From Ostrea edulis (lineage: Eukaryota), in the NCBI RefSeq assembly GCF_947568905.1, contig NC_079173.1, positions 36,208,001 through 36,272,000 on the forward strand: a stretch of DNA of 64,000 bases, in the 5' to 3' direction. Shown here in pieces: positions 32,223-62,625 of this stretch. Position 1 is the first letter of the stretch. Every line of letters starts with the position of its first letter. The notes under the pieces are model-generated. The model worked only from the letters and a program-made list of their open reading frames with translations, ran no database searches and had not been told where the DNA came from. The position numbers were made by a program, and so were the translations under genes.

Positions 32223-33164
32223 TTAAAGTCTCGTTGTCATCATTGGCGAGGGTGGATTTTGCATGCAGATCAAATCCCGTCTAGAATCTTTATGTCTTTT
32301 GGCGAATGTCTTTAACAATGATTGGAATAATACACGGGCTCTCTTTGAATAAATAAAGTAAATGATTGGGTTGACCGATGCATTCACCAACCACATGATT
32401 CTAGCAACGATCAAGATGTGTTTACATTGTCTTTCATCTTGGCAAACCTTGTTGTAATTGAGTATAAAACAAATTGGAAATAGCAGAGCTGATAATATGT
32501 AAATGAAAAGAATCACAGTAAGCATGCGCGACATTCGCCGGATGTGACGTTTTAGATCTGGAATATTGATAGAATGATGCAGTTCATGTACCTTTTGAAC
32601 ATGAAAAAATACCATGAAACACACAGGCACTACTAATAAGTAACCCCTAAAGCTGAGAACGACGATCTGTATGTCAATCTCTGGAATTCTGAACCGGAAT
32701 ATGAAATATAAACCTCCAAATATCACACTAAATATCCACAATGCAATAGACCATCTGATTATTGTGCGAGTTTGTATCAGACGTGCTTTGATTGGATTCC
32801 TTATGTAAAAGTATCGAAGCCCTAAAAACAAAATCACGTGGGCCGCCGACGCATGCGTAGTCGCGTACGTCATTGCCATGAACAGATCTCCATACTCGTT
32901 TCCAATCCGCTGGTTAACGTTCTCCACGACAGCCTGGACGATGTAGCATACCAAACAAGCAAGGTCAGCTAGCACCAGTGTAGCCAACACCATGTAAGTA
33001 GGCTTATGAAAGGCCGGGTCACTCACAATTTTTGTTATGGCTATCGTATTTCCAATTATCCCCAAAGATGTTAAGAACACAACAACGACCGCAAAATCCA
33101 CGGACTCCAATTCTAAATACACCGGTATTATATGTTCAGGTCTGTCGATATCTGAGGTGTTCAT
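32223..33164 (-). CDS. Class A (rhodopsin-like) orphan GPCR, single coding exon, about 313 aa
   Basis: Seven hydrophobic segments; GN (TM1), LADL (TM2), LRY in place of DRY, W (TM4), P (TM5/6), NASVNPIIY (TM7); ATG at 33164; acceptor at 33181. Confidence 0.9.
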   Translation of the reverse strand: MNTSDIDRPEHIIPVYLELESVDFAVVVVFLTSLGIIGNTIAITKIVSDPAFHKPTYMVLATLVLADLACLVCYIVQAVVENVNQRIGNEYGDLFMAMTYATTHASAAHVILFLGLRYFYIRNPIKARLIQTRTIIRWSIALWIFSVIFGGLYFIFRFRIPEIDIQIVVLSFRGYLLVVPVCFMVFFHVQKVHELHHSINIPDLKRHIRRMSRMLTVILFIYILSALLFPICFILNYNKVCQDERQCKHILIVARIMWLVNASVNPIIYFIYSKRARVLFQSLLKTFAKRHKDSRRDLICMQNPPSPMMTTRL

Positions 33165-33499
33165 CCTCACACGAAGGTAACTGTATAAAAATAGTTATAT
33201 TTAGTAACAGGTATCATGTATACATGCATTAGTTATGGAGGAACGTGACAGAAATGTGCTCAGTCTTGTGCCAGATTTCAGCTACATCTCTTACCCCTAT
33301 TTTCTTGCAAACTGATATTGCTTTCTGTTGATTTCAAGGTTACAGGTAAAAAGCCAAGGTCAGTGGAAGGGGAAATCTATGAATTTCTTGTGTGCAGGTT
33401 ACGTTCGTTATCCGTATTTTGTCAGATTTGCAAGAATACCCTTCACGAATTTCATTTTCAGGAATGTTACTTTATATGCAAATCCGGTGGTGTGGAATG

Positions 33500-44763: not shown

Positions 44764-45780
44764 TTAATGCTGAAGACTTCCATCTTCTCACATGCTCTAT
44801 TTCTGTACTATTTCAAAATTTAATGCATGCAGAATTAAAAATCTCACTGACTCGGAATGAGCGAGATTTGTACGAGAACTATAGATCCCAATTTAGTAAC
44901 AAGGATGAAAACTGATATTGGGTCAAAAGTTTGGAATTAAAATGCAGAACAAATGTCCTGAATGTTTTGTCAGAGAGCAAAACAGGATTGCATCATACAA
45001 ACACAACGCTAACGACCTTTGAATGGTAAAAATCAACTGTATAACGATTGGAATTTTAGCCGTGTTGATAGAGGCGCCTTTGTATCGTAAAAAGCAACGG
45101 CATGAACCAAAGTATTATATGTAGATGTTTGATAAAGGCGTCTTTATATCGATAAAGACTAGAGTTTTAACTGTTTTAACAGAGACATCTTTGTATCGTA
45201 AAGAAGCAGTCTGGTATAACGATAGATAAAGTTGAAGTTTTAGCTATTTTATTACAGGAGTCTTAAAAACCCAACAACGATAAAGATTGAAGTTTTAGTA
45301 AAGGCGACTATGTATCGTATGAACAACGGTAAAGATTGAAGTTTTAGTTGTTTTAATACGGGTGCCTTTGCATGATAAAAAAATCCAATGAAGATGGGTG
45401 GTTTTGCTGTTTTGATCAAGGAGTATATATATTTTGATCTATAGTCCTAATTTGTAAGGTAAAAACAACCGGAAAGATAGTTTTTTGCTCGTTTGATAGA
45501 TGCACCTTTACCAAAAATAATCTGTTATTGAACTCTAAATCAGAGCAAATATCCGCTCTAATAACAAGCGGGATATAATTTGTGTCAGCAAAATAATTTT
45601 AATCATCCACAATAAGGCAGAAATGCATGTAAAAAACACAACAACTGAAAATTAGTCAATCCCACGACGAAGCTGAATGTGGAACAACATGTATGGTTTA
45701 TGTCTGTAATGATATAATCCACCGCCTTATAGTTTTAATTTGCTTTGGATGATGATGTATTTCGCTAGCAAGTTATACAG

Positions 45781-47403
45781 TTAATGAAATAATTTCATCA
45801 ATAGATTGTTATATTCTATCACACTTTCCATGCTTTCAAAACAGACGGATGAACCTATATACCACGTGTTGAATTGACCCTGCATATCCAGGATATCCCA
45901 TAGATAACCCCTATTTGCCTCTGGGATGCGGAATCTCGGAAAATAATATCCCCACTTGATCTGTTCCAAAATCTTAGGATTCGTTTTATCAAATCTTTGC
46001 AGATGCGCAGATAACTTTGATTGGATAATGAAGTCGATGTCCTTTGTCCAAGGATTTTCTGTTCCATACTGATAGTACATAACTGTTTCTTGCGGGTTTC
46101 TATCAGGACCATTTTCCCGAATTCCCAGACGATGAGGATCGCCCGTGATGTTATTCTTGGCGTGGTAAGTGTTGTAGGTTGCGTACACGGGATAAGTCGG
46201 CTGCTCTATGTCACTGTTGTAGTACGATTGCGGGTCCCGGCCGCGTCTGCCATTGTCAGATTCTATGAGAGTTGTGACGTAGTTAGCGTTCGTCAGTGTA
46301 CTAAAGAGACTCTTTTCCTTTGGGTTGAAATCTACGATACGGAATAAAGAATTCATCGCTGGGGTGAGGATCAAAAAATCAAACCTCTCCGTAATAAGAA
46401 GCGGATTCCCGGGTATTTTGTAAATTACATTTATCCCAGATGGCCCAACTTGTCTTTGAATGCTTTTGATATCAGTTCCTAGAAGTATATTCAATTTGTT
46501 TCGTTCAGCTATTTCAGTAACAAGGGTTTGAAATCCTCCACGTAGAATCCAGAAACCGTTTTCAGGAGTAAAAACGCCCCTTATTACGGTGGGAGGAACC
46601 CACATCAGCCCGTAGACCGCCGCTGTTTCGTTGATATATCCATACCCATTTGTTGTAAGAAATGTTCTGAAAATTGGTGCCAAAAGTAATAAGTCATTCC
46701 GCTGTAAGAAATCTAGTACCGATCCCTGAATTTGATTGAGGACTTCCGGTGTTGGTCGTGGCATAAGTTCGCTGGAATAATTGCCAAACAAACACCGATG
46801 GAGTCGGTCGTACCTTTCAAGAGCAGCTTGCACGCGGCGAAGGGCGGCTTGTGGTGTTGCCTCCCCTGTGTTTCGAACCAGGAGGTTTGTCCAAGTAGTC
46901 TCCTCTGAAATGAGAAAGAAAAATGTTTATATTATCTTTCGAATTACTTGTCGCCCTGTGGGGATCCGGGTTAGAATAGGATCTCAGTACCCCTTGCTTG
47001 TCGTACGAAACTTCTAAATGGGTCTGTCCTTCGGATGAGATAGCAACAAGAGTACCGCGAATGGTACATAATACGCTCGTGAAAATGCTTACTAGGGTGT
47101 TTTTCTTAAGCCATAGTTGGTAGAATTTTGCTTCGGGTAGTATTAGCCATCATCAGGCTGTGAATACTTTCTTTGCATAATGTGAATATTTCCTAAAATG
47201 GACTAAGTTCGACAACCTGTAATTTTCTTAAAAATTGAAGGCAACCAAAACCCTTCCACATGCACATCTTCCATACACATACAAATATTTTGTAAAATAA
47301 GAAGGTCCTCATTTGAAAACTGTAGAAAGAAAAATAAAAGACAAATCATGTACTCTTTATGCGATATTTCCTCAAAACTTACTAAGTTCCACAACCTGCA
47401 ATT

Positions 47404-47444
<41 letters not shown>

Positions 47445-50400
47445 AAGGCAATTGAGATCCTTGCCACTTGCACATCTTCAATATCCATACAAACACTCTG
47501 TAAAACGAGATCATCCTTACTTGAAAAGTGTGGGAGAAGTTAGCCGGACAAATTAGGTACCCTCCACATAACAATAATTTTCAAATAAAGGGGCAAAACT
47601 CCTGCAAGAAGATCGAAATGGATTAAAATTGCACTAAGATCTAGAGTGGTCCACAAAGAAGCTACATAGTAAGTGTCAGCTTGATAGGTGACAGAGAAAT
47701 GAAATTAGAAACAGAAAACCCCTAACGGACGGACAGACGGACGTACAGACATTGCTGTACCATCTAAACACGGGCGTATAAAATCCGATGCCCCGTGTCA
47801 CAGCAGATGTGGTATGATAAAAATCCCCCCTGCTCAAAGGCCGTATAAGCGACGAGCACAGGCCTCAATTTTGTAGCCCTTCGCCGGCAATGATGACGTC
47901 CGAGATTCGGTGAAGGCGTCAGTCCAAATATTCAGCCGAGATTATATCGTATACAAGCAGGGCAGCATTATACAGGGTACTTTAATTGATTGGATATTGT
48001 ATAACGTCCCTCTCGAGAATTTTTCACCCATGGAGATGCCACATTGCCGGTGAATAGCTGTATTTGTCCTATGCTCAGCGCTTACGGCTTTATCGCACCA
48101 CACCTGTTGTGACACGGGGCCTCGGTTTTTTTGATCTTATCCAAAGGACCGCCCCATTTAGTCGCCTCTTACGACAAGCAAAGGGTACTGAGGACCTATT
48201 CTAACCCGTGAATGCGGATATACCTTGATTAGAACTGAAGTGTATCAAATATATAAGTATTCATGCTCACCTTGATCACTCTCCCACACTGTGGAGAGTC
48301 CCTTAGGTCGGATTTGAAATCCAACGTTGTATCTTTCCATTAATTTTGCTACCTGATCGTAAATATCGCTCATAAAAATTGTTCCAAATTCATTCCAAAC
48401 GCCCCTGTAGAATCGTGAGTAAGATTTTCCACCCACTTCCTCTCGTTGTTCTAAAATTTTGACATTTTTATAGCCACGTTCCTGTAATACAAGTCGCAAG
48501 AATTACATCGATTCAAAGGGAAATAATTTTTCATATTCTTTACATGTGTAGTAATGAGTTTACAATTGTAAAGTTCTGCAATAACTGTAGGTAAAATGAA
48601 AATACTATTATGTCTTCGGGTGTCACATTGCAATTGCCACAGTGTAGCAAACACAAATTGAATGGACAATTAAACAATGCAGGTTTGTGATATTTCTCGT
48701 GCATTCGTCGTTTTCCTCTTATGTTACATGTATGTATCATTCAGATATAAAGCAAGGGGTACGTGAGTTTTAGCAGTCATCTAAGTATCATAATGTAAAG
48801 AAATTGATTAGAAGGTTTGGATTTTAAAAGTGCCAGCGTGCACCTTTAAACCTTAAGAACTGGATGTCTATAGTTTTTTTCTCGTCCAAGATGATTCTTG
48901 TAAAGTTATCTAAATATCCAAAAATAGGAACAGCGATCTTCACCAAATTATCACGAGTCAGGGGGATATATATTGCCTGATAATATTGTTTCGTTATGTA
49001 CAACGTTTGTGTCAAATACTTCCTCCCATGCCTTTCGATAACAAAGGTATGGTCTGCAATATATATTTCTTACAGATTTATTTGTTCTTGAAGACGAAGA
49101 ATTCGCTCGGCGTCATCACAAATTGTCGCAACCTTTGTATGATAACTTGATTTCTAAAACATTATCCATTATAAAATTGATGTCCGACAAATGCTTCTTC
49201 TCGATTTATCATGAGTTTAGGGTCATGACGCATTTTCTAAGGGCTTTCCCCAACAGAATTTTCGATTGAAGGGTTGTTTCTACGTTACTTTTAATAATGA
49301 CTTTCACTTTGTTAAATGAAAGGTGAGGGGAACGAACAGTGATCATTTTCATAAGGAATACAAAATAGAGAGTTGATTAAAAACGGACCCCTAGATATAC
49401 TAGAGGTGGGATCTGGTGCCTAGGAAGAGTAAGCATCCCTTGTCGACGGGTCAGTCAGTATTTCGCAAATTCTATGGTCATTATAAGCCATTATAATGAT
49501 CTAGTTAGTCAATATAACCTATCATTAGGTCAAATGCAGTCTGACGTGTTTCATACTGATTGTTAGCCGTTCTTGACACACTGATTTTGACTACGGATAA
49601 CTTCCGTTTACCTCATCAAGTTATAGGGCTCAAGGCGGGTGTGACCGGTCGACAGGGTACGCTTACTCCTCCTAGACACCTGATCCCAGTTCTGGTCTAT
49701 CCAGGAGTCCGTTTTTACCCGACGCTCTATTTTGTATTGCTTATAGGAGTTATGAGATTGATCACCGTTCGCGTTATTTTCACCTTTCATGTTAAAAACT
49801 GGTTTATTCCCCGACAGGACGGTGACCCCAAAATTCATACATTGTATTCCCCTAGCTATAAAGCTGCCACACGATATGCCTTATACAGTCACGGAAAGCA
49901 ATATATCACCTAATTTAGGCTGAGAAGATTTTGTCCTATGGATAAACGCGTAAGGCATCGTGTCTGAGTGCAATACAGACCTTTAGCAGGGAAGCCATGT
50001 GCACTCCACCTATTCCAGCTCCGACGATGGCGATGCGGTCGTGAATGGATTTTGGACCATTTATCGCTGGGTATCCCATGGACACTCTCTGAAAAAATGA
50101 TTTTACAGCCCATTGTAATCATCAAATGTATAATGTTACTAAGGTTAAAGGTTATACTAATGTTAATAAGCGTAAGCTTAGCGAACATGGAGTTACTGAT
50201 ACTCGGTCAGTCGGTCAGAACATGAATGGCAGGAAATGCAACTATACTGCCTCCAGTTTAATATTAGCTTGATGAGTGGAGGACCGTTAGCTTCGTAATG
50301 GAGAGATAGCGAGATCGAGCCCCGCTCGTACCATGGCCGCGCCAAACCTAAGACGGTAACATAAGTCGTGATTGCTCCTTCGCCAAACGCTCGGCATTTA

Positions 50401-51571
50401 GAAGTGAGAATCACATTTGGATATGGCCGTAAAAACGGTGGTCCCGTGTCGCGGCAGTTTTTTGGCACGCTAAAGAATCCCCCTGCTACGACCAAGCATG
50501 GGTCTAAAGAGGTACTTCATCTGCAGTCAGTGACTTCTCATTATGAGCAAAAAAAATTCTCGAAGGGACGTAAATAAAATAAACAATCCCCCAAACAATA
50601 TTTGTTAATGAATATCGTACAGTACTTTCTTGGGAGTGTGGGATATGTCACCCGTGCTTTGTATAGACTTCTGCTTTTGACATGAAAATCTCCCAATTTT
50701 TCATCCTCGTCACTCAGTTACACGAAGATTAATTAACTTTAACTGATAGTTAGTGTCTGTTTACATTGTACAACTAAGTACATGTACAATGTAAAGGTAG
50801 GAGTCAAATGGGTTCATAGGTTTTAAAACTATGGATACAAATATTTTTATGCCCCCGAGTCTGTACGTTTGTCTGTCCGTTCGTTTTTGTTTCATTTCTC
50901 TGTCACATATCAAGCTGAAACTTGCTATGCAGCTTTGTGGATCACTTTGAATCATGTTGCAGTTTTGATCAATTTCCACCTCCCTTGCAGGAGTTTTGAC
51001 CCTTTATTTGAAATATAATGTCTTAAGTTTGTCAGCCTAACTCCTCCCACAATTTCCAAGTGAGGCTCTTCTTTTACGAAGTGGTTGCATGTGCATGTGG
51101 CACGCGTTTTCATTTTCTTCCATGTTTGAGAAAATTACAGGTTGTTAAACTTTGTCAATTTTGGGGAAATATTTTACACGCAGAGCGCTTGATTTGTCTG
51201 TTTACCTCCGGTACGTTTTTAAGCTAGGACCCTTTCTTTTCACACGTCGCAGCTTGACAATGGCTGATAAGTTCTACATCTCCTGTATAAACCTGTTATA
51301 TGCGAGTTACATTCCGTTACACTTGTTCGATATATTGTGCATGGTAAGAAATTCTTCGTCATTTGGAATCTAGATACATAATGATTGATATTCCTTACGA
51401 TAAAATCATACCCTGTTCACATGAGGAACTTAATTCGCATTAAATGTAAGTTATTATTAAATCTATACTGCGTCACTATGTTGCTAAATGTAAATTTAAA
51501 GCTTCTAAAAACTTGAATTGAAAGCGCTAAAGCTTTATTAAACGTCTTCGTGTTTCTTTTTTATCTTTTTA

Positions 51572-51628
<57 letters not shown>

Positions 51629-51982
51629 CAATAAAATGCAGTTCCAAAATTAGTGGGTTTTTTAATTTCGCGTACATGTTCATTTAGAAATGCATATTTA
51701 ATGCGCATTAATAAGTTTACTTCGCATTACCGTCGTGTAAACATTCGGATTAATTTAATGTGCATCATTTTGTTTCGCATTGAATTCAATACGAAGTAAA
51801 AATTTAATGTGCATCCGTGTGAACAGGGCATTAATATATATATATATATATATATATTTAAAATGACATACACGTACATGTACCTTATATGCATCACACT
51901 GAAAATTCGCAGGAAATTCCACATATCCTTTAACACTAGGAGTCAGCCCAGCTGTTCCAAATAGAAGTATTATTAATAACAT
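45781..51982 (-). CDS. Secreted FAD-dependent oxidoreductase (amine oxidase fold; PUFA isomerase-like), 4 exons, 513 aa
   Basis: Exons 51982-51884, 50088-49981, 48481-48271 and 46904-45781 all have GT-AG ends and compatible phases (0,0,1). Signal peptide MLLIILLFGTAGLTPSVKG; Rossmann motif RIAIVGAGIGG...ILE...VGGK; C-terminal NTWYIGS..CFE. Confidence 0.9.
46955..47920 (+). mobile_element. SINE split by a Helentron-like insertion of about 730 bp (about 47041-47775)
   Basis: The SINE 5' part ends at ggatgaga (47040) and resumes near 47780; the insert starts aacaagag and ends ggacagacggac...gggcgtataa. Confidence 0.6.
47985..48210 (-). mobile_element. SINE-like repeat
   Basis: Reverse complement of the 23063-23338 family. 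Confidence 0.7.
49313..49790. mobile_element. PLE 3' end with an inverted copy of its last 140 nt or so at the 5' side
   Basis: Minus arm 49313-49453; plus arm 49457-49790. Confidence 0.72.
50280..50585 (+). mobile_element. tRNA-derived SINE (degenerate)
   Basis: Similar to 36335-36592. Confidence 0.6.
51498..51536 (+). ncRNA. Decayed type I hammerhead at a PLE-like 3' end abutting (TA)n
   Basis: aaagctt-CTAAAAA-cttgaatt-GAAA-gcgc-TA-aagcttt: 7-bp stem I and palindromic AGCGCT stem III retained; core and stem II mutated. Confidence 0.5.
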
Positions 51983-52689
51983 GTCTATATAGCATATACT
52001 ACCGCACTATTCAGACTTAAAACGCAACATTGTCACCACGCTGTAATAAAATAAAGATTGTTGTCATGCGTCGTGACCTTCTAATCTGTCATATGTCCAT
52101 GTATGGCTGTCAAAAACGATGTTGCTAAAACACGAAAAGGAAAACGAAAATATTTTGTTTCCTCATGCTGCACAATTTCACCGCAGCTCTGTTTTTGCTG
52201 AGTTAGATTGACACCAATGTAGAGATGAAACATGTCAGAAGAGTATATAAACTCTGACAGGGGATCAGCGTAACCGCGAATCACACAATGCAAAATGCCG
52301 ATTCCCTAAAATTAAAAATGTACAATATATATGCTCAAGAAAATGGAAAATATTGTATGTTATAATGTTACGCATGATCGGAAACCCACGGTTGATTACA
52401 CGTCGTTCCTCTCTCCATCACCTGTGGGTTCATTCATTCTCTCGTTCTCTTTTGACTTTTTGGTTTATTTTACCTTAATTTTATTTGAGGAAAGGCATGT
52501 TCTGTTAAAATATTCATTAAAAAAATAGTATTTTCATAAAAGAAATCTTGGTATAAAGCTACGTAATACATCTCTATAAAAATGTGAAATAGAATAAATC
52601 GTTTACTGAAGATGTTTTTAATTTTTTTGAATTTTTTAAATCAAAGGTGGATAACTCTTACAAACAAAAGATGATTTACCGGGCATGTG

Positions 52690-53828: not shown

Positions 53829-56800
53829 TGTGTTATCTTTAATGGGTTCCTATAAGGCTAATATAAGCCTTAATAAACTAAAACAATGGCGGTTGTTCCA
53901 TGCTTGTTTTATTGTGTACCTCAACATGAATTGATGACATCATACACAGGAATGCAATGCACAAGGGGTCGTCTCAAAACATATAAATGTTACATCTTCC
54001 CTCTTATAAAAATAAATGAGCTACCATAGCTTCCCAAGATAGTGAAATTTGTGTAAAGTTGCACCAACAATACTTATGTAAAGACATACATGATGTTGTA
54101 AGTTATGCTGTGTATGTTATTATGATTTGACGCATGACATATCTTTAAGTGAACACTAAAATTAACAAACTAAAAATAAAACTGTAACTACTTGTTCTAT
54201 GTAACTAATACCACATGTAGCATTTCTAACACAGTACAAATTATCCCCTGGATATGTACATCAAATGCAATAGAATTGTTCATGTCCTTCCTATCAAACC
54301 TCATTTTATGGTACTGATCTTAACCACAAAAGCAAAATTACATTTCTTCAATTAATCTCAGTGGTTTCTTAACTGACCTACCAGACCTTGTGGTCCCTGA
54401 CATATTTTGTGCAGGTACATAACTGGTGCTAACAGACATATCATGGCTAAGTGATTGAGTATTTTCATCATCACATGGATTTTGACTAGACTGACATACA
54501 TTATCATTGTTTTGACAATCATATTGCTCAAATGGTGTAAACTGTTCATTTGAATGCAAAATATGCCTGCGATTTCTGCGGTACATATGTCCATTTTCGG
54601 TCTGAACCAAGTATGACCTCGGAGCAACTCGGTCTATCACCTTGCCACGGTTAATCCAGTTACTGTCACTATGATCCCGAAGTCGGACGGTTTGCCCTGG
54701 ACTCAACGGCAGTAGTTCTTTCGTGTTTTTGTCATGATACTGTTTTTATTTCAGTTTCTGTTGCATTTTTGTTCTTTCATAAGATTCTGCTTCACGGTTC
54801 TCACGACAACTATCAGCCATTGGTAAGTTTGAACGTAGTTTGCGGCCATTGTTCAGCATTTCCGCTGGTGATTTTCCATCGAGTATTGGAGTTGCACGGT
54901 AGATGAGTAAACTCATGTGGAAATCGGATCCATCATTAGCAGCTTTTTTCAATAAACCTTTTACGAAGCCTACGGTTTTCTCCACTAACCCATTCGATTT
55001 TGGGTACAATGGACTTGATGTATGATGTTGAAAATCATACGACTTTGCAAATTCACTGAATTCAGCTGATTTGAATTGTGGTCCGTTAGCACTGAACACT
55101 ATTTTAGGTATGCCTTGGCCTGAAAACTCATATTTCATTGCCTTAATGACTGACTGACTTGAGACACTGTGCAAACGACACACTTCTGGATAATTGGAAT
55201 AATAATCACACAACACAAGATAATTTTCTCCTTTGAATACACACAAATCTGCTCCCACTTTTTCCCACGGATAGTTGCATACATCATGTGGTCTTAGCGG
55301 TTCAGGCGGTTGTTTTGGACGGAATTTGATACATGTTGAACATGAATTCACCATTTCCTCGATTTGTGCATTCATTCCCGGCCAATACATCACTTGTTTG
55401 GCTCGATTTCGACATTTCTCAATCCCAAGGTGACCTGTGTGGATTTTGCTAAGCATCTCCTTTCGTAATGACATAGGGATGACAATACGGTCTGTTTTCA
55501 TGATGATCCGATCACATAGACTCAACTCGGTCCGTACATTCCAGTACTCCAAGATTTCCTTAGGACATTCAGTGCGCGTTTCTGGAAACCCTTTTGCGAT
55601 TACTTCTGCTAGTAGCTGTAATTTCGGATCCTGTTGCGTTTCCTCACAAATCATCTGTAATTTACGATCCGATATCGGTAGGCTCCTAATGACAGAGTCT
55701 ACATACACTTTTATATCCTCCTCCTGTGCTGATTTGGTCAGTTTCGTGGACATATCCAAACCTCTAGATAGCGCATCAGCTGTATGCATACATTTTCCTG
55801 GCATGTAGCCAATATGCAGATCGTATTTCTGTACCCTCAACAGAAGTCTTTGTAATCGTATTGGACAGTCATTCAGAGACTTCTTAAAGATGCTCACAAG
55901 AGGTTTGTGATCAGTTTCCACTTCTACAGTCTGTCCAAATATGTATTGGTGGAAATGTCCACATGCAAATGATATGGCCAGTATTTCTTTCTCGATCTGA
56001 GCATATCTCGTTTCTGCATCAGACATAACTCGCGACGCATATGCCACCGGCATCCATTCGTTGTCATGCCTCTGGAAGAGCACCGCTCCAAGTCCAGAAC
56101 TAGAGGCATCTGAAGAGATTTTAATGTCTTTGCTCGGGTCAAAGAATTTAAGTACCGACGTACTTGTTAATATGGCCTTCAGCTCATCAAATGATTTCTG
56201 TTCAACAATAGTCCACTGAAATTGGTTCTTTTCCTCTGTGAGATTTCGTAAAACTTGTGTTTTCGACGACAAGTCTGGAACATATCTGGCTTGGTAATTC
56301 AACATGCCTAGAAAGCGTTGTACGTCTTTCTTACTTTTTGGAGTCTCAAAGTTCGTTATGGCCTTGACCTTGGCCTCGTCCGGCTTAATTCCTTCTGCAG
56401 ATATTGTGTCACCGACGAATGTAAGTTCCTTCACTCCAAATACACATTTTTCGTGATTCAGTTTGAGATTTGCATTGCGCGAAGCATCGAAGACCTGCTG
56501 TAGTCGTTCGTTGTGTTCTTGTAACGTTGTGCCCCAAACAATGATATCATCCATGATTGTCGTACATCCTGGTATGTGCTCATATATCATGTGAATGGTC
56601 CTGTGATATATCTCTGGAGCTGATGAGATACCGAATGGTAGACGTAAAAATCGATATCTTCCGAATGGTGTACTGAAACAGGTAAGTTTTGAGGAATTCT
56701 GATCTAGTTTCATTTGCCAGAATCCAGTGCGAGCATCAAGTTTACTGAAATAATGCGCATTCTTGAACTTCGCATGAATCTTATCTCGCGTTGGCAGTTT

Positions 56801-58475
56801 GTAATGTTCTCTCTGAATTGCTTTGTTCAGCTGAATAGGGTCCAGACACACACGGATCTTTCCGTCTTTTTTTGGAACGATTACAATGGGGCTCACCCAG
56901 TCTGTATGTTCGGTTTCTTTACATACGACACCCATCTCCTCCATGCGTTTAAGTTCGTCTTGTAGTTTTTCGTGCAACGCAAAGGGTATTTTGCGACATG
57001 GACTCACTACTGGTGAAATGACTGAATTTACGGATAATTTATGTTCACCCGGTAAACATCCTAGTCCTTCGAACAAGTCTTTATTTTGATCCACCATCTG
57101 TGCAGTAGTGTCTGTAACCTTTGTGCAGTTTTCTATGGTGTATGTGCGTTTGACTAGTCCTAACTTGTCACAAGCTTTTACGCCTAAGATTGCTGTCGAC
57201 GCGTCCTGAACTATCACAAAGTAGACCTTTGCAGCTTTGTCATGATGTAACACATCCAGTATGCATGCTCCTAAGACCAGAATACTATGCTTGCTGTACG
57301 ACATGAGCTGTATATTCGTCTTGTGGAGTTTTGGCTTCCATCGTAGGCTGCGATACTGTTTCTCCAGCAAGATGTTGACTTGACTACCTGTATCCAATTT
57401 GTAGTTAATTTCCTTGCCATTGGTGCGTAGTGTCACACGTCACTCCTCTGGTTTATCAGGTTGAACCGTCTCCAGAGCGTCGATAAAGAAAGCTAGTTCA
57501 TCCTGAATGTCGTGAATATGTTTCTTTTTCTGTGTTTTCTTTTTACTGCTGCTTTGTTTGCCTTTTGATCTGCAAACTTTTGCATAGTGATTTGCACCAT
57601 TGCACTTATTGCATATTTGACCCATGGCTGGACAAGTCTTATGAGAGTCATCATATCCACACCGTCCACACAACTGTACGCGACCTTTACTTTGTTTAGC
57701 TCCATGTAGTTTCCTGTCTTTGGGTCATGTACCGACCGCATGTACCTCTGATGGAGGGACAATAATTTTAATTTGTTCCTTTGTAGACTCAGCTGCTCTA
57801 CAGGTTGCAAGTGCTTTGTCTAACGTGAGGTCGACAGTACGTAGCAAGCGCTCTTTAAGTGCGTTATCTGGTACTCCACAAATAATCCTGTCACGAATGA
57901 GCGAATCTACTAAATCACCAAATTCACAGTTTTTTGCCATAGTTCTTAACTGCGTTACGTATTGATCGATGGTTTCATCTGATCTCTGTACCCTCGTGAA
58001 GAATTTGTGTCTTTCGTAAGTTGTATTTCGTTTTGGAGTACAATATGCTTCAAATTTCTCGAGAATTTTTTCTAATTTGAACTCCTCATCCGGTCCAAAC
58101 ACAAAAGTGTTATAGACTTGCACTGCCTTCTCTCCTACTACGTGTAAGAAAATGCATGCTTTTTCCTTATCATCCTTTTCGGACGCACCTGTAGCATTCA
58201 TATAAATATCAAACCTTTGTTTGAACTTCTTCCAATTTTCGGCCACGTTGCCCGTGAGCACAAGCACACCTGGTGGTTTCAGTTTATCCATGGTCCACTT
58301 CTGACACCATGTGTTATCTTTAATGGGTCCCTATAAGGCTTTTATAAGCCTTAATAAACTAAAACAATGGCGGTTGTTCCATGCTTGTTTTATTGTGTAC
58401 CTCAACATGAATTGATGACATCATACACAGGAATGCAATGCACAAGGGGTCGTCTCAAAACATATAAATGTTACA
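53829..58475 (-). mobile_element. Complete Ty3/Gypsy LTR retrotransposon (inactivated)
   Basis: 166-bp TG..CA LTRs (53829-53994, 58310-58475; 3 mismatches); 5-bp TSD GTCGT; PBS TGGTGTCAGAAGTGG (tRNA-Leu-like) at 58295-58309; PPT AAGAGGGAAGA at 53995-54005. Confidence 0.97.
54338..58291 (-). pseudogene. Single-frame gag-pol (gag, CCHC, protease, RT, RNase H, integrase) with three in-frame stops
   Basis: Four ORF pieces share one frame; stops TGA 57725, TGA 57440, TAA 54746; LDTGS, IMDD, SDAS, HLGIEKC...C..C; integrase SDNG changed to SANG. Confidence 0.92.
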
Positions 58476-59078: not shown

Positions 59079-62000
59079 GACTTGTTCATAGTTTCCGTAA
59101 TCAACTTCTTTTTATGAGGTCGGGTGATTAGCCCTACGCTCAACCTCGTTGAGGTGGTTTTTCTGTTGGGGTTTTCCTTCCCTTAGATGACGGTCTTTTT
59201 AAGACTATTGGATGCCATCCCCCAGGTTTTACAATAAGAAGTCGTGGGGTAAGCATAGCTATCGAGCATACTCCAAAGGATGATTTCATAGCGGACAGAG
59301 ATGCAAGCATGATGTCTACGGGCCAAAGCCGAAAGGAAGTTCGCGGACAGAGGGATATGCTAGCAAGCCCCAAAAACATCGTCAGGTTGGGATCATGGAA
59401 CGTAAGAACTATGTACTCCACTGGAAAAACCGCACAAGTAATAGCAGAAATGAAGATATACCACCTAGATATACTTGGAATAAGCGAATGCAGATGGACA
59501 GATTCTGGAAAAATCAGAACCCAGACAGGTGAAACGATACTGTATTCTGGAAGAAAAGATAACCATCACAGTAATGGAGTTGCTATTGCTATATCAAAGG
59601 AGAAAGCCAAAACATTATACGAATGGGCACCCATTAACGACCGCATCATAACTGCCAGGTTCTGGTCAAACTATATAAAAACAACATTAATACAAGTGTA
59701 TGCACCTACCAATGATGCAGACGAGGAATCAAAAGATAATTTTTACGAACAACTACAGGGAGTCATAGACAACACTCCACGCCATGATATTATAATTCTA
59801 ACTAGCGATATTAATGCAAAAGTAGGTAACAAACAGGAAGGAGAGGATGGAATTGTTGGAAAGTATGGTTTACACTCGGAAAGGAACGATAATGGAGAAA
59901 GATTTGCATCATTTTGTGCCATCAACAACTTGGTAATATCTTCAACAATGTTTAAACATAAAGACATACACAAGCAGACATGGACTTCACCAAATGGTCA
60001 ACACAAGAACCAGATAGACCATGTAGCAGTCAATGGGCGCTTTAAAAGATCTGTGTTGGATGTCAGAGCACAACGAGGTGCAGATGTCGGATCTGACCAC
60101 AATTTAGTCATCACAAAAGTAATGCTTAAACTGCACAAAATAGGAAAGAAACCAACATCTTCAACAAGATTCGAGACATGCAAACTTAAGGTACCAGAAG
60201 TTCGGAAACAATTCCAAATAGAACTGAGGAATAGATTTAATGCACTCAGTGAAGACAACACCATAGGTCCCAATCCTGATGATATAGAGGAAAGAAGGAA
60301 CAACATTAAAACTGCATATAATGAAACTGACATAAACGTACTTGGGTATAGAAAAAGGAAAAACCAGGAATGGATACGCCAGGGCAGTTGGAAAAAGGTA
60401 GAAGAGAGGCGAGTTCTAAAGGGCAAAGTAGAAAGTGCAAGATCAGAGAGATTAAGAGCTAGACTAAAAGAAAAGTATGGGGACAAAGACAAAGAGGTGA
60501 AAAGAAGTTTTAGAAAAGACAAACAACAATGGGTAGACGACATGTCGAATGAGGCACAAGAGGCAGCAAACATCGGAAACATGAAAACTGTATATGATGT
60601 AACCAAATTATTGTGCAATGAACGTCCAAAAACTGTTGAGGCAGTAAAAAACAAGGAAGGAAATCTCTTGACTAAAGAGGAAGATATAAGAAAAAGATGG
60701 ATGGAACACTTCAGCGAAGTGTTAAATAGACCAGACCCTATTGATCCTGCTGAAATACTAACAGGGGAGTCCATCGAATTAGACATAGAAACAGGTCCAC
60801 CAACAGAAGATGAGATAAGGAGAGCATTGAAAGAAATGAAATTAGGCAAAGCTCCATGTGTAGATAACATCACTGTAGAAATATTGAAATCAGACATAGA
60901 AACAACTGTCAAGGAACTACACAAACTATACAACATTGTCTGGACAACTGGAAAAGCTCCCAAAGATTGGAGAAGGGGATTTATAATAAAGTTAGCAAAG
61001 AAAGGTGACCTGACAAACTGTGGAAATTGGAGAGGAATCACACTAATAGCAACAAATGCCAAAATAATGGGGAAAATAATAATAAAAAGAATTGTACTTG
61101 GTGTAGACAGACATTTGAGAATGGAACAAGCTGGATTCAGGACAGGAAGAGGCACCACGGAACAGATATTTGTCCTACGTAATATTCTAGAACAAGCTAT
61201 AGAATGGAACTCCAACCTCTATCTATGCTTCGTCGAGTTTGAAAAAGCCTTCGACAGCGTACACAGGGAAACCCTTTGGAAGATCATGAAATCTTATGGA
61301 ATACCAGACGAAATAATCAGTATGGTTAAATTAATGTATGAAGACAGTGAATGCGCAGTTGTTGATGGAAATGGTACAACAGAATGGTTTAATGTTAAAT
61401 CTGGTGTCAAACAAGGATGCAACATGTCGGGTTTCTTGTTCCTCCTGGTAGTTGACTGGATAATGAAAAAGACAACAGCAGATAACAACTCAGGCATAAG
61501 ATGGAATATGACAACAAAATTAGACGATCTAGATTTTGCAGACGACATCGCTTTATTATCCAGCAGCAAAGATCAAATACAACAAAAACTGAACTCTCTA
61601 AACAGATATGCAGCTAGAACAGGTTTAAAAATCAATACAGGAAAAACCAAAGTTATGCGTCTAAATGCTGCAAACATCACACCAATAACATCAATGGAAA
61701 CAACACAAACGATGTGGATGAGTTCATTTACCTCGGAGCAACAGTAAGCAAGACAGGAGGTACTAATGAAGATATAAGAAGAAGAATTGGCCATGCAAGA
61801 GTAGCATTCCATAAGCTACGCAAGATCTGGAGCAATAACCAACTCAACAGAAAAACAAAAATGAAGCTCTTCAGCTCAAATGTAATAGCTGTGTTATTGT
61901 ATGGCAGCGGGACCTGGAAAATGACAAAAGGGGACGAAAAACTTGTAGATACCTTCCAGCACAAATGTCTTAGGAAAATCTTGAAGATCTACTGGCCAAT

Positions 62001-62324
62001 GAAAATATCAAATGTAGCAGTTAGAGAGATAGCAGGAGTAGCAAAGATCAGCACTATGATAAAAACACGCAGATGGCAGTGGATTGGACATGTGCTACGG
62101 ATGGATAAAAGAACACACCCATATGTAGCCCTTAGTTGGACACCAGAAGGAAAAAGAAAGAGAGGAAGACCGAAGGAAACGTGGAGAAGAACAATAGAAA
62201 GAGAGAGGAAAGAATTGGGTCATGGAAAGAGGCAGCAAGATCAGCCCAGGATAGAAGTAAATGGAGAGGACTTGTTCATGGCCCTATTCTCCACGAGGAG
62301 AGAAGGAATTAAGTCAAGTAAGTC
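59079..62324 (+). mobile_element. Full-length RTE-clade LINE (APE plus RT), frameshifted
   Basis: TSD atgtctcgcatc (59067-59078, 62325-62336); GSWNVRT, YAPT and GSDH endonuclease motifs; QAGFR, KAFDSV, VKQGC, FADD; frameshifts near 61688 and 62221; aagtcaagtaagtc tail. Confidence 0.93.
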
Positions 62325-62625
62325 ATGTCTCGCATCTTAAAAAGTGTGATGACCTATATATTTTATCTGATAATTCATTAGTTTTAACTCTGATAAATTG
62401 AAATGAATACAAATTTTAAACTTTTATCAGGATGTATGGAGTCACTTTCAACAATCAATCATATTTATGTACATTTATACACTTTTTTCTGTGAAATTTC
62501 ATTTTGTTACTTGTATGTCACTGTTTGTGGTCTGAGCAAAAACTGAACTCATACTTTATACATCCTTATAAAGAATGACCCAATTAACTCCTTGAATCTG
62601 CGCGAGATGCTAGACTAGACGTTAA

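What the first reader, a model, noticed from the sequence alone, without database searches (positions are those of the whole stretch)
45781..51982. Secreted flavoenzyme resembling polyunsaturated fatty acid double-bond isomerases
Seen: a clean 4-exon gene encoding a signal peptide and an FAD-binding amine-oxidase-fold protein. Inference from recalled sequence patterns: RIAIVGAG...ILE...VGGKSYS..YRG...EFG, T.NGYGY.....AVY, W...GGFQ.L and WGYYFPR......G....I..MQGQ.NTWYIG....FE appear colinear with Propionibacterium acnes linoleic acid isomerase (PAI), rather than with MAO or LAAO. A secreted red algal polyenoic fatty acid isomerase and fungal CpaO-like enzymes belong to the same broad group. An extracellular PUFA-conjugating or related enzyme in a bivalve would be an uncharacterised lipid, defence or digestive activity.
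Basis: partly seen in the sequence, partly recalled or inferred. Interest (0 to 1): 0.7.

Follow-up and report, generated by a model that had tools for sequence, protein, structure and literature searches.

The report
Oyster PAI/PFI-type secreted flavoenzyme gene
This is a real, expressed four-exon oyster gene for a probably secreted FAD enzyme whose closest solved relative is the bacterial fatty-acid double-bond isomerase PAI; orthologues in other bivalves are already labelled "polyenoic fatty acid isomerase-like", and I found no report of an assayed animal member.

Summary
A minus-strand gene with four exons at 51982-45781 encodes 513 aa. All introns are GT..AG, and spliced transcript contigs from a close relative join exactly at the three predicted junctions.

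Family profiles hit P. acnes PUFA isomerase PAI (2b9w) over its full length at E 1e-40 to 7e-56. L-amino-acid and monoamine oxidases match only through the N-terminal FAD motif, at E 1e-13 to 1e-20. A model of a 74%-identical orthologue gives PAI Z 36.8, CpaO 28.8 and all others 27 or less. The window's own exon-4 product gives 26.2, 21.1 and 17.4 or less.

The family is large and mostly eukaryotic. Bivalve and cnidarian members form one clade, and oyster and scallop share two intron positions, so this is not a recent gene transfer.

NCBI already names the Pacific oyster and scallop orthologues "polyenoic fatty acid isomerase-like". This scan found a paralogue earlier on another piece of this genome (s1-271540).

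Isomerase activity is inferred only. PAI's carboxylate-clamp Arg88 is Ser in oysters and is absent from every bivalve and cnidarian member I inspected.

Verdict: new member of a known kind, of moderate interest.

The parts
51884..51982 (-). Exon 1 (coding part): start codon at 51982-51980, residues 1-33, GT donor at 51883-51882.
   Evidence: The spliced contigs of X1 and X2 cover 51884-51993 and run on past the laid stretch, so the 5' UTR is at least 11 nt.
51926..51982 (-). Predicted signal peptide, residues 1-19 (MLLIILLFGTAGLTPSVKG).
   Evidence: Hydrophobicity analysis, and equivalent leaders in orthologues. Inferred; no signal-peptide predictor was run.
49981..50088 (-). Exon 2, residues 34-69. 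It contains the dinucleotide-binding GAGIGG motif at 50005-50022.
   Evidence: Weak Pfam NAD_binding_8 and Pyr_redox_2 hits on the exon alone. Junctions confirmed.
48271..48481 (-). Exon 3, residues 70-140 (the last codon is split). It holds ILEQREEVGGK at 48425-48457 and the position aligned to PAI Arg88, which is Ser132 here, within 48284-48301.
   Evidence: Pfam Amino_oxidase scores 23.5 bits against a cut-off of 19.8. Arg88 alignment. Junctions.
45781..46904 (-). Exon 4, residues 140-513 plus the stop codon at 45781-45783. It encodes the substrate domains and the C-terminal FAD-binding segment. Motifs: TTNGYGY at 46636-46656, WGYYFPRF at 45931-45954, MQGQFNTWYIGSSVCFES at 45832-45885. N-x-S/T sequons at residues 181, 231 and 391.
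   Evidence: Alone it has no Pfam or NCBIfam hit, and its only PDB sequence hit is PAI. Its AF2 model gives PAI Z 26.2.
45567..45780 (-). Probable 3' UTR of about 214 nt, with ATTAAA at 45598-45603.
   Evidence: The X1 contig has 533 letters beyond position 46100. Sequence read.
46905..48270 (-). Intron 3 (1366 nt, phase 1), at the same alignment position as a scallop intron.
48482..49980 (-). Intron 2 (1499 nt, phase 0), at the same alignment position as a scallop intron.
50089..51883 (-). Intron 1 (1795 nt, phase 0). It holds dispersed repeats and a (TA)n/(TATA)n tract.

Best explanation
Shown: the locus is an intact, transcribed oyster gene under purifying selection. Its 513-aa product has an N-terminal leader, a non-covalent-type FAD-binding Rossmann motif and the complete three-domain architecture of the PAI family. 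That family is a distinct branch of the flavin amine-oxidase superfamily. Its characterised members are P. acnes PUFA isomerase (PAI) and, according to public naming of the orthologues, the red-algal polyenoic fatty acid isomerase (PFI).

Inferred mechanism: after the leader is cleaved, the roughly 57-kDa glycoprotein is exported. It binds a long-chain polyunsaturated lipid in a hydrophobic channel over the flavin. FAD N5 takes a hydride from an allylic or bis-allylic carbon and returns it two carbons away, through a carbocation intermediate. This shifts a double bond into conjugation with no net redox change, as described for PAI.

PAI's Arg88 carboxylate clamp is replaced in every bivalve and cnidarian member I inspected. 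The way the substrate is held, and perhaps the substrate class or the position of attack, therefore probably differs from PAI.

I put family membership at about 0.9 and PUFA or polyene double-bond isomerisation as the actual activity at about 0.4-0.45. The confidence figure given for this explanation refers to the activity, which is the weaker claim.
For: Gene model and transcription.

Purifying selection: 18 synonymous against 6 non-synonymous differences to the organism-A transcript in exon 4.

Sequence:
- Exon 4 alone hits only PAI in the PDB (E 5.7e-5).
- The bivalve/cnidarian profile A1 hits PAI at 1.5e-40 over both halves; the next hit is an LAAO at 1.2e-13, mostly N-terminal.
- The broad profile A2 hits PAI at 7e-56 against 1e-20 for the next.

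Fold:
- Orthologue model (pLDDT 85): Foldseek top hit is 2b9w, E 7.7e-28, TM 0.73/0.83.
- VIA on the same model: Z 36.8, rmsd 2.5 A over 418 of 423 PAI residues; CpaO 28.8; all others 27.1 or less.
- Window's own exon-4 model (pLDDT 86): PAI Z 26.2, CpaO 21.1, all others 17.4 or less.

Public names: 'polyenoic fatty acid isomerase-like' for Mizuhopecten, Pecten and an earlier Crassostrea gigas record. The ESM Atlas has a mollusc cluster of that name at TM 0.83/0.89.

PAI mechanism: described as ionic, via a carbocation, in PMC13076199.

Leaders: eukaryotic members carry them, whereas the bacterial-type members I inspected start at the Rossmann motif.
Against: - No activity data exist for any animal member in the searched literature.
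- PAI Arg88 aligns with Ser132 here. It aligns with Ser, Thr, Asp or Ala in all inspected bivalve and cnidarian members, although Arg is the commonest residue at that column in the wider family (46 of 140).
- PAI Phe168 aligns with Asn here and with Gln or Asn in most of the family.
- Identity to PAI is only about 19-20%.
- The next-closest solved relative, CpaO, is an H2O2-forming oxidative cyclase, so this branch is not chemically uniform.
- The Ptilota PFI sequence was never compared directly.
- Secretion rests on a hydrophobic N-terminus only.
- The transcript evidence comes from a relative that is about 97% identical, in runs whose RNA status is a guess, although the joints are absent from the DNA runs.
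Confidence: 0.45

Rival explanations
1. It has the same fold and family but is a net oxidase or dehydrogenase. FAD abstracts a hydride from a hydrophobic, non-fatty-acid substrate (an alkaloid-, terpenoid- or amine-like metabolite, or an algal toxin from the diet) and is re-oxidised by O2 to give H2O2, as in CpaO. The role would be defence or detoxification in a secreted compartment.
For: CpaO is the second-best structural match (Z 28.8 and 21.1) and forms H2O2 stoichiometrically (PMC13003489). The carboxylate-clamp Arg is lost in the animal clade. Oysters show lineage-specific tandem expansion, which is typical of environment-facing genes: consecutive LOC numbers on one contig in two Saccostrea species.
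Against: PAI is clearly closer than CpaO, by 5-8 Z units and by an E-value of 1e-40, while CpaO is not among the top sequence hits. Nothing here bears on O2 reactivity.
Confidence: 0.3
2. It is an isomerase or desaturase for another polyene or lipid class, such as esterified PUFAs, fatty amides or alcohols, or dietary carotenoids. It would use the same hydride-shuttle chemistry without a free-carboxylate anchor.
For: Arg88 is replaced and a hydrophobic residue sits at the Phe193 position. The superfamily contains FAD-dependent carotenoid desaturases, which match at Z of about 16-25.
Against: Carotenoid enzymes are no closer than ordinary amine oxidases. NCBIfam CrtI and CrtD hits cover only the N-terminal motif and lie far below the cut-offs.
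Confidence: 0.15
3. It is an ordinary secreted L-amino-acid or monoamine oxidase of the molluscan defence type (the escapin/achacin kind).
For: Pfam Amino_oxidase is the only family hit. My own background knowledge, not checked here, is that molluscs secrete LAAO-type toxins.
Against: LAAO and MAO match only the N-terminal 80-100 residues, at E 1e-13 to 1e-20, against 1e-40 to 7e-56 over the full length for PAI. On the window's own substrate domains they score Z 17.4 or less against 26.2 for PAI.
Confidence: 0.04
4. It is a recent horizontal acquisition from a bacterium or alga, or contaminant DNA in the assembly.
For: The closest solved relative is bacterial. The family is patchy in animals, seen here only in bivalves and cnidarians.
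Against: - The gene has three spliceosomal introns, two at the same positions as in a scallop orthologue.
- Transcripts are spliced.
- The neighbours in the window are typical of an animal genome: a rhodopsin-type GPCR, a B-box ORF and retroelements.
- The bivalve clade has support 0.98 and bivalves plus cnidarians 0.94.
- Relatives occur in an ichthyosporean, a chytrid, oomycetes, a foraminifer, a dinoflagellate and a chlorarachniophyte.
Confidence: 0.02

Closest known systems
[quoted passage not shown]
   Same: It is the best and only full-length PDB match by sequence profile (E 1.5e-40 and 7e-56). All three domains match by fold: Z 36.8 with rmsd 2.5 A over 418 residues on the orthologue model, and Z 26.2 on the window's exon-4 model. 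Shared motifs are GxGxxG...E...GGK, GYG, W.YFP and MQG..NT.Y.G.
   Different: Identity is about 19-20%. PAI has no leader, whereas this protein has one. Arg88 aligns with Ser, Phe168 with Asn and Phe193 with Val followed by Phe. The oyster protein is about 70 residues longer in its mature form. Its activity is untested.
[quoted passage not shown] 2002, cited in PMC7700177)
   Same: Public annotation names the oyster and scallop orthologues 'polyenoic fatty acid isomerase-like'. From my recollection of the 2002 paper, not checked here, PFI is a eukaryotic flavoprotein of about 500 aa with a signal peptide and glycosylation. It converts arachidonate and EPA to conjugated trienes (PMC7700177).
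   Different: The PFI sequence could not be retrieved, so its identity to this protein, its placement in the tree and its residue at the Arg88 column are unknown.
CpaO, beta-cyclopiazonate oxidocyclase, PDB 9kp8
   Same: It is the second-best structural match (Z 28.8 and 21.1). Its authors report PAI as its own closest structural homologue (PMC13003489).
   Different: CpaO has covalent 8-alpha-N1-histidyl FAD, carries out net oxidation with H2O2, and has divergent substrate domains. It is clearly more distant from the oyster protein than PAI is.
Manduca sexta salivary hexenal isomerase Hi-1 (GMC oxidoreductase)
   Same: It is an animal, secreted, FAD-dependent C=C isomerase with no net redox change. 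Its authors suggest a PAI-like role for FAD (PMC13076199). So a secreted flavin isomerase in an animal has a precedent.
   Different: It has an unrelated fold (GMC family, PF00732/PF05199) and a C6 aldehyde substrate.
L-amino-acid oxidases and monoamine oxidases
   Same: Same superfamily (Pfam PF01593) and the same FAD-binding domain.
   Different: Only the N-terminal FAD motif aligns by sequence. Z is 9-10 units lower than for PAI.

Membership tests
Flavin amine-oxidase superfamily (Pfam PF01593) | N-terminal beta-alpha-beta dinucleotide-binding motif GxGxxG, an acidic residue at the end of strand 2, and a following GG motif | tested here: met
   IAIVGAGIGG...KILEQREEVGGK lies in exons 2-3. 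NAD_binding_8 hits it.
Flavin amine-oxidase superfamily (Pfam PF01593) | Score above Pfam's gathering threshold for Amino_oxidase | tested here: met
   The exon-3 fragment scores 23.5 bits against a cut-off of 19.8. Full-length orthologues score 42-61 bits.
PAI/PFI-type PUFA double-bond isomerases | Full-length sequence homology to PAI that exceeds homology to any other solved flavin amine oxidase | tested here: met
   PAI at E 1.5e-40 and 7e-56 over both halves. The next hits, at 1e-13 and 1e-20, are N-terminal only. Exon 4 alone hits only PAI.
PAI/PFI-type PUFA double-bond isomerases | PAI's three-domain fold, including the two domains outside the FAD site | tested here: met
   Z 36.8 with 418 of 423 PAI residues aligned, on the model of a 74%-identical orthologue. 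Z 26.2 over PAI residues 97-423 on the window's own exon-4 model. Both are predicted models.
PAI/PFI-type PUFA double-bond isomerases | The Arg88/Phe193 gate that fixes the free carboxylate. This role is recalled from Liavonchanka et al. 2006 and 2009; those papers were not readable here. | tested here: not met
   Arg88 aligns with Ser132. The column is Arg in 46 of 140 family members but never in the bivalve and cnidarian members inspected. The Phe193 column holds Val250, with Phe251 next to it. The alignment has gaps nearby, so a shift of a few residues is possible.
PAI/PFI-type PUFA double-bond isomerases | Redox-neutral conversion of methylene-interrupted double bonds to conjugated ones | not testable with these tools
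   This needs an enzyme assay. No report on an animal member was found.
PAI/PFI-type PUFA double-bond isomerases | Direct sequence relationship to Ptilota filicina PFI | not tested
   The PFI sequence was not retrieved by any search. Only source-given names, 'polyenoic fatty acid isomerase-like', support the link.
CpaO subfamily | Covalent 8-alpha-N1-histidyl FAD and CpaO-type substrate domains | not tested
   The histidine position was not mapped. The structural match is clearly weaker than to PAI.
L-amino-acid / monoamine oxidases | Homology across the substrate-binding domain | tested here: not met
   Only the N-terminal 80-100 residues align, plus one short stretch. Z is 17.4 or less on the substrate domains.

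The most novel reading that the evidence does not exclude
Bivalves and cnidarians share an old, secreted clade of PAI/PFI-type flavoenzymes that has dropped the carboxylate-clamp arginine. If these enzymes conjugate dietary EPA, ARA or DHA, or their esters or amides, outside the cell, they would be the first animal PUFA double-bond isomerases. They would also be a previously unknown source of conjugated polyene lipids in marine animals, with a possible role in digestion, defence or signalling.
Probability: 0.3. Interest if true: 0.6.

Novelty: new member of a known kind. Interest (0 to 1): 0.35.

Why it matters
I found no report of an assayed animal member of the PAI/PFI family, in a library that omits most subscription journals. 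Only a handful of members of the whole family are characterised, although it has at least 635 clusters (50% identity) at E 1e-30 or better.

A secreted version in filter feeders that take in large amounts of algal EPA and DHA is a reasonable candidate for an extracellular lipid-modifying activity. Conjugated PUFAs also have commercial and pharmacological interest.

The gain over public knowledge is modest, however. Orthologues already carry the 'polyenoic fatty acid isomerase-like' label, and this scan had already followed up a paralogue.

This report adds:
- splice junctions confirmed by transcripts;
- a fold test on the window's own substrate domains;
- intron positions shared with scallop;
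- the finding that the inspected bivalve and cnidarian members lack PAI's Arg88.

Tried and rejected
- Retrieving the Ptilota PFI sequence failed. I tried three word-index searches, the exhaustive profile search and three cluster look-ups. P0066, also 500 aa, turned out to be an unnamed intronless ORF on a 2.2-kb contig of GCA_024449935.1.
- The PAI structure paper PMC1413795 is not held. A search for papers naming Arg88, Phe193 or Phe168 returned only unrelated DNMT3A papers. The roles of those residues therefore rest on my recollection.
These are pattern-based scans, so a blank says little. One bacterial-looking contig does carry a member (P0040 on L003).
- The context of P0057 is not on record.
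- Literature searches for the oyster locus identifiers, and for conjugated polyenes in bivalves, found nothing relevant.
- The FgLAI12 paper does not say which protein family that fungal isomerase belongs to, so I make no claim about it.
- The ESM Atlas feature search listed fungal amine-oxidase and prenylcysteine-oxidase clusters at saturated scores of 0.97-0.99. I judged this uninformative and did not follow it.
- NCBIfam gave only N-terminal motif hits far below the cut-offs.
- L001 (Logan SRR25445034) is genomic, not a transcript.
- There is no tandem paralogue inside the window.


Full report
OBSERVATION

The finding's coordinates hold a minus-strand gene. Reading the sequence gives four exons: 51982-51884, 50088-49981, 48481-48271 and 46904-45781. 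Each intron starts with GT and ends with AG, and the intron phases are 0, 0 and 1. Spliced in a script, the exons give 1542 nt, which is 513 codons plus a stop.

The product aligns end to end with annotated oyster proteins. Examples are P0009 over residues 1-523, and P0002 from Saccostrea echinata at 74% identity. No second copy lies in the window.

I laid four public runs on 46100-51999. Two runs of a closely related organism (X1 and X2, about 97% identical, guessed to be RNA) each hold one contig that skips exactly 46904|48271, 48481|49981 and 50088|51884, with CT..AC ends on the plus strand. The DNA runs of the window's own organism (X3, X6) run through the exon-intron borders instead. The gene model is therefore correct and the gene is transcribed, at least in that relative.

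Of the 24 differences between that transcript and the window in exon 4, 18 are synonymous and 6 are not. That is the pattern of purifying selection.

An ATTAAA lies at 45598-45603, about 31 nt before the point where the transcript contig should end. The end point is an inference.

WHAT THE PROTEIN IS

The curated libraries see only the general flavin amine-oxidase features:
- Pfam Amino_oxidase and NAD_binding_8 hit exons 2-3 and the orthologues.
- The 373 residues encoded by exon 4 have no Pfam hit.
- No NCBIfam hit reaches its cut-off; only N-terminal motif matches appear.

Against PDB sequences, exon 4 alone has a single hit: P. acnes PUFA isomerase PAI, 2b9w, at E 5.7e-5. Profiles built from relatives sharpen this.

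| Profile | PAI (2b9w) | Next best |
|---|---|---|
| A1, 20 bivalve, cnidarian and protist relatives | E 1.5e-40, 143 bits, both halves of the protein | LAAO, E 1.2e-13, essentially the first ~80 residues |
| A2, 34 sequences from the whole family | E 7e-56 | E 1e-20, N-terminal only |

Fold comparison gives the same ranking.

| Model | PAI | CpaO (9kp8) | All other amine oxidases, PPOX, desaturases |
|---|---|---|---|
| P0002, 74% identical orthologue, pLDDT 85 | Z 36.8, rmsd 2.5 A, 418 of 423 PAI residues | Z 28.8 | Z 27.1 or less |
| Window's own exon-4 product, pLDDT 86 | Z 26.2, rmsd 2.9 A, 322 residues, PAI 97-423 | Z 21.1 | Z 17.4 or less |

Foldseek on the P0002 model also puts 2b9w first, at E 7.7e-28 and TM 0.73/0.83. 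I modelled the exon-4 product because the spliced protein has no reference to hand to the tools. It contains the substrate domains.

FAMILY AND HISTORY

The exhaustive profile search found 635 clusters (50% identity) at E 1e-30 or better, and 1893 at E 1e-10 or better. All of the best 150 score higher than PAI does.

Named members include:
- oysters: Saccostrea, Magallana;
- scallops: Mizuhopecten, Pecten, Argopecten, Ylistrum;
- cnidarians: Actinostola, Sanderia, Hydractinia;
- an ichthyosporean (Amoebidium), a chytrid (Terramyces), oomycetes (Aphanomyces), a foraminifer (Nonionella), a dinoflagellate (Effrenium) and a chlorarachniophyte (Lotharella).

One member (P0040) sits on a densely packed, bacterial-looking contig. 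The structure search of the ESM Atlas lists many bacterial clusters just below the mollusc cluster.

In a FastTree of 140 members, the bivalve sequences form a clade with support 0.98. Together with the cnidarian-containing groups they form a clade with support 0.94.

The scallop orthologue P0035 has exon borders at residues 71/72 and 143/144. These are the alignment positions of oyster introns 2 and 3. The anemone gene has no introns.

Taken with the spliced transcripts and the animal-type neighbours in the window, this rules out contamination and a recent transfer. An old transfer into early animals cannot be excluded.

Oysters have two subfamilies. The one holding this gene shares about 65-75% identity within itself. 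A second subfamily is about 45-50% identical to it. The first forms tandem arrays in two Saccostrea species, shown by consecutive LOC numbers on one contig.

WHAT IS ALREADY KNOWN

NCBI names the Mizuhopecten and Pecten orthologues 'polyenoic fatty acid isomerase-like'. An earlier record of the Crassostrea gigas orthologue (XP_034309230.1) has the same name. The ESM Atlas has a mainly molluscan cluster of 60 members with that automatic name, which is the best structural match (TM 0.83/0.89).

The full-text library holds only two papers that mention the enzyme. Both refer to the red alga Ptilota filicina. None mentions the oyster loci.

This scan had already followed up a paralogue on another piece of the same genome and reached the same conclusion (s1-271540). 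That note calls the genome flat oyster. My data say only that it is an ostreid 66-74% identical to Saccostrea and Magallana proteins.

HOW IT PROBABLY WORKS

Shown: an FAD-binding motif, PAI's architecture, a hydrophobic leader, three N-x-S/T sequons and no C-terminal retention signal.

Leaders are present in the oyster, scallop, anemone, dinoflagellate and many unnamed eukaryotic members. The bacterial-type members I inspected begin at the Rossmann motif, as PAI does.

Inferred: export, then PAI-like chemistry. The flavin takes a hydride from an allylic carbon of a polyunsaturated chain and returns it two carbons away, via a carbocation, which gives conjugated double bonds with no net redox change. 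This mechanism is summarised in PMC13076199.

The main caveat comes from the alignment. By my recollection of Liavonchanka et al., Arg88 together with Phe193 fixes the free carboxylate in PAI. The papers were not readable here.
- Arg88 aligns with Ser132. Arg is the commonest residue at that column in the wider family (46 of 140), but it is absent from every bivalve and cnidarian member inspected.
- Phe168 aligns with Asn225, and with Gln or Asn in most of the family.
- The Phe193 position is hydrophobic: Val250, with Phe251 next to it.

The animal clade may therefore hold its substrate differently or act on another lipid class. Because the next-nearest solved relative, CpaO, is an H2O2-forming oxidative cyclase, a net oxidase activity is the main rival.

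I put family membership at about 0.9, PUFA or polyene isomerisation at about 0.4-0.45, a CpaO-like oxidase on another hydrophobic substrate at about 0.3, another polyene or lipid class at about 0.15, and an ordinary LAAO or MAO at below 0.05.

VERDICT

The function remains an inference, and the novelty is limited because the label already exists in public annotation and in this scan.

What this report adds:
- junctions verified by transcripts;
- a fold test on the window's own substrate domains;
- intron positions shared with scallop;
- a bivalve-plus-cnidarian clade;
- loss of the Arg88 clamp in the inspected members of that clade.

Novelty class: new member of a known kind. Interest: 0.35.

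Noticed in passing
window 54746-57436 (-): An uninterrupted 896-aa ORF with reverse transcriptase, RNase H, integrase zinc-binding and integrase core domains. It is an LTR-retrotransposon pol (Ty3/gypsy-like domain order) about 3 kb upstream of the gene.
   Followed up: partly
window 59309-61747 (+): An 812-aa ORF with an endonuclease/exonuclease/phosphatase domain and a reverse transcriptase, so a LINE-type element. The adjoining ORF at 61714-62340 carries DUF6451.
   Followed up: partly
window 32223-33170 (-): A single-exon 315-aa ORF with a rhodopsin-family 7TM receptor domain (E 4e-18).
   Followed up: no
window 1460-3016 (+): A 518-aa ORF with an N-terminal B-box zinc finger. It may be a TRIM-like gene. 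Earlier notes of the scan place hammerhead-bounded retroelements in this part of the window.
   Followed up: no
window 48070-48266 and 49252-49842 (introns 3 and 2): The summed contig depth in the DNA runs is 10^5 to 10^6 times that of the exons, with many joints and loose ends. These are high-copy dispersed repeats inside the introns.
   Followed up: no
P0016 (Logan, 436 aa): This oyster subfamily-B protein matches the query twice: residues 214-352 map to its 3-138, and residues 205-512 map to its 126-432. This is either an internal partial duplication or an assembly artefact.
   Followed up: no
L003 (Logan SRR21358347 contig, 8001-9440): A family member without a leader (P0040) sits on a compact, bacterial-looking contig. 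It lies next to a multicopper oxidase with a CopB-like part, a methyltransferase, a D-Ala-D-Ala carboxypeptidase and an MFS transporter.
   Followed up: partly
L005 2001-3569 (Actinostola sp.): The sea-anemone family member is encoded by one uninterrupted ORF, whereas the bivalve genes have introns.
   Followed up: partly
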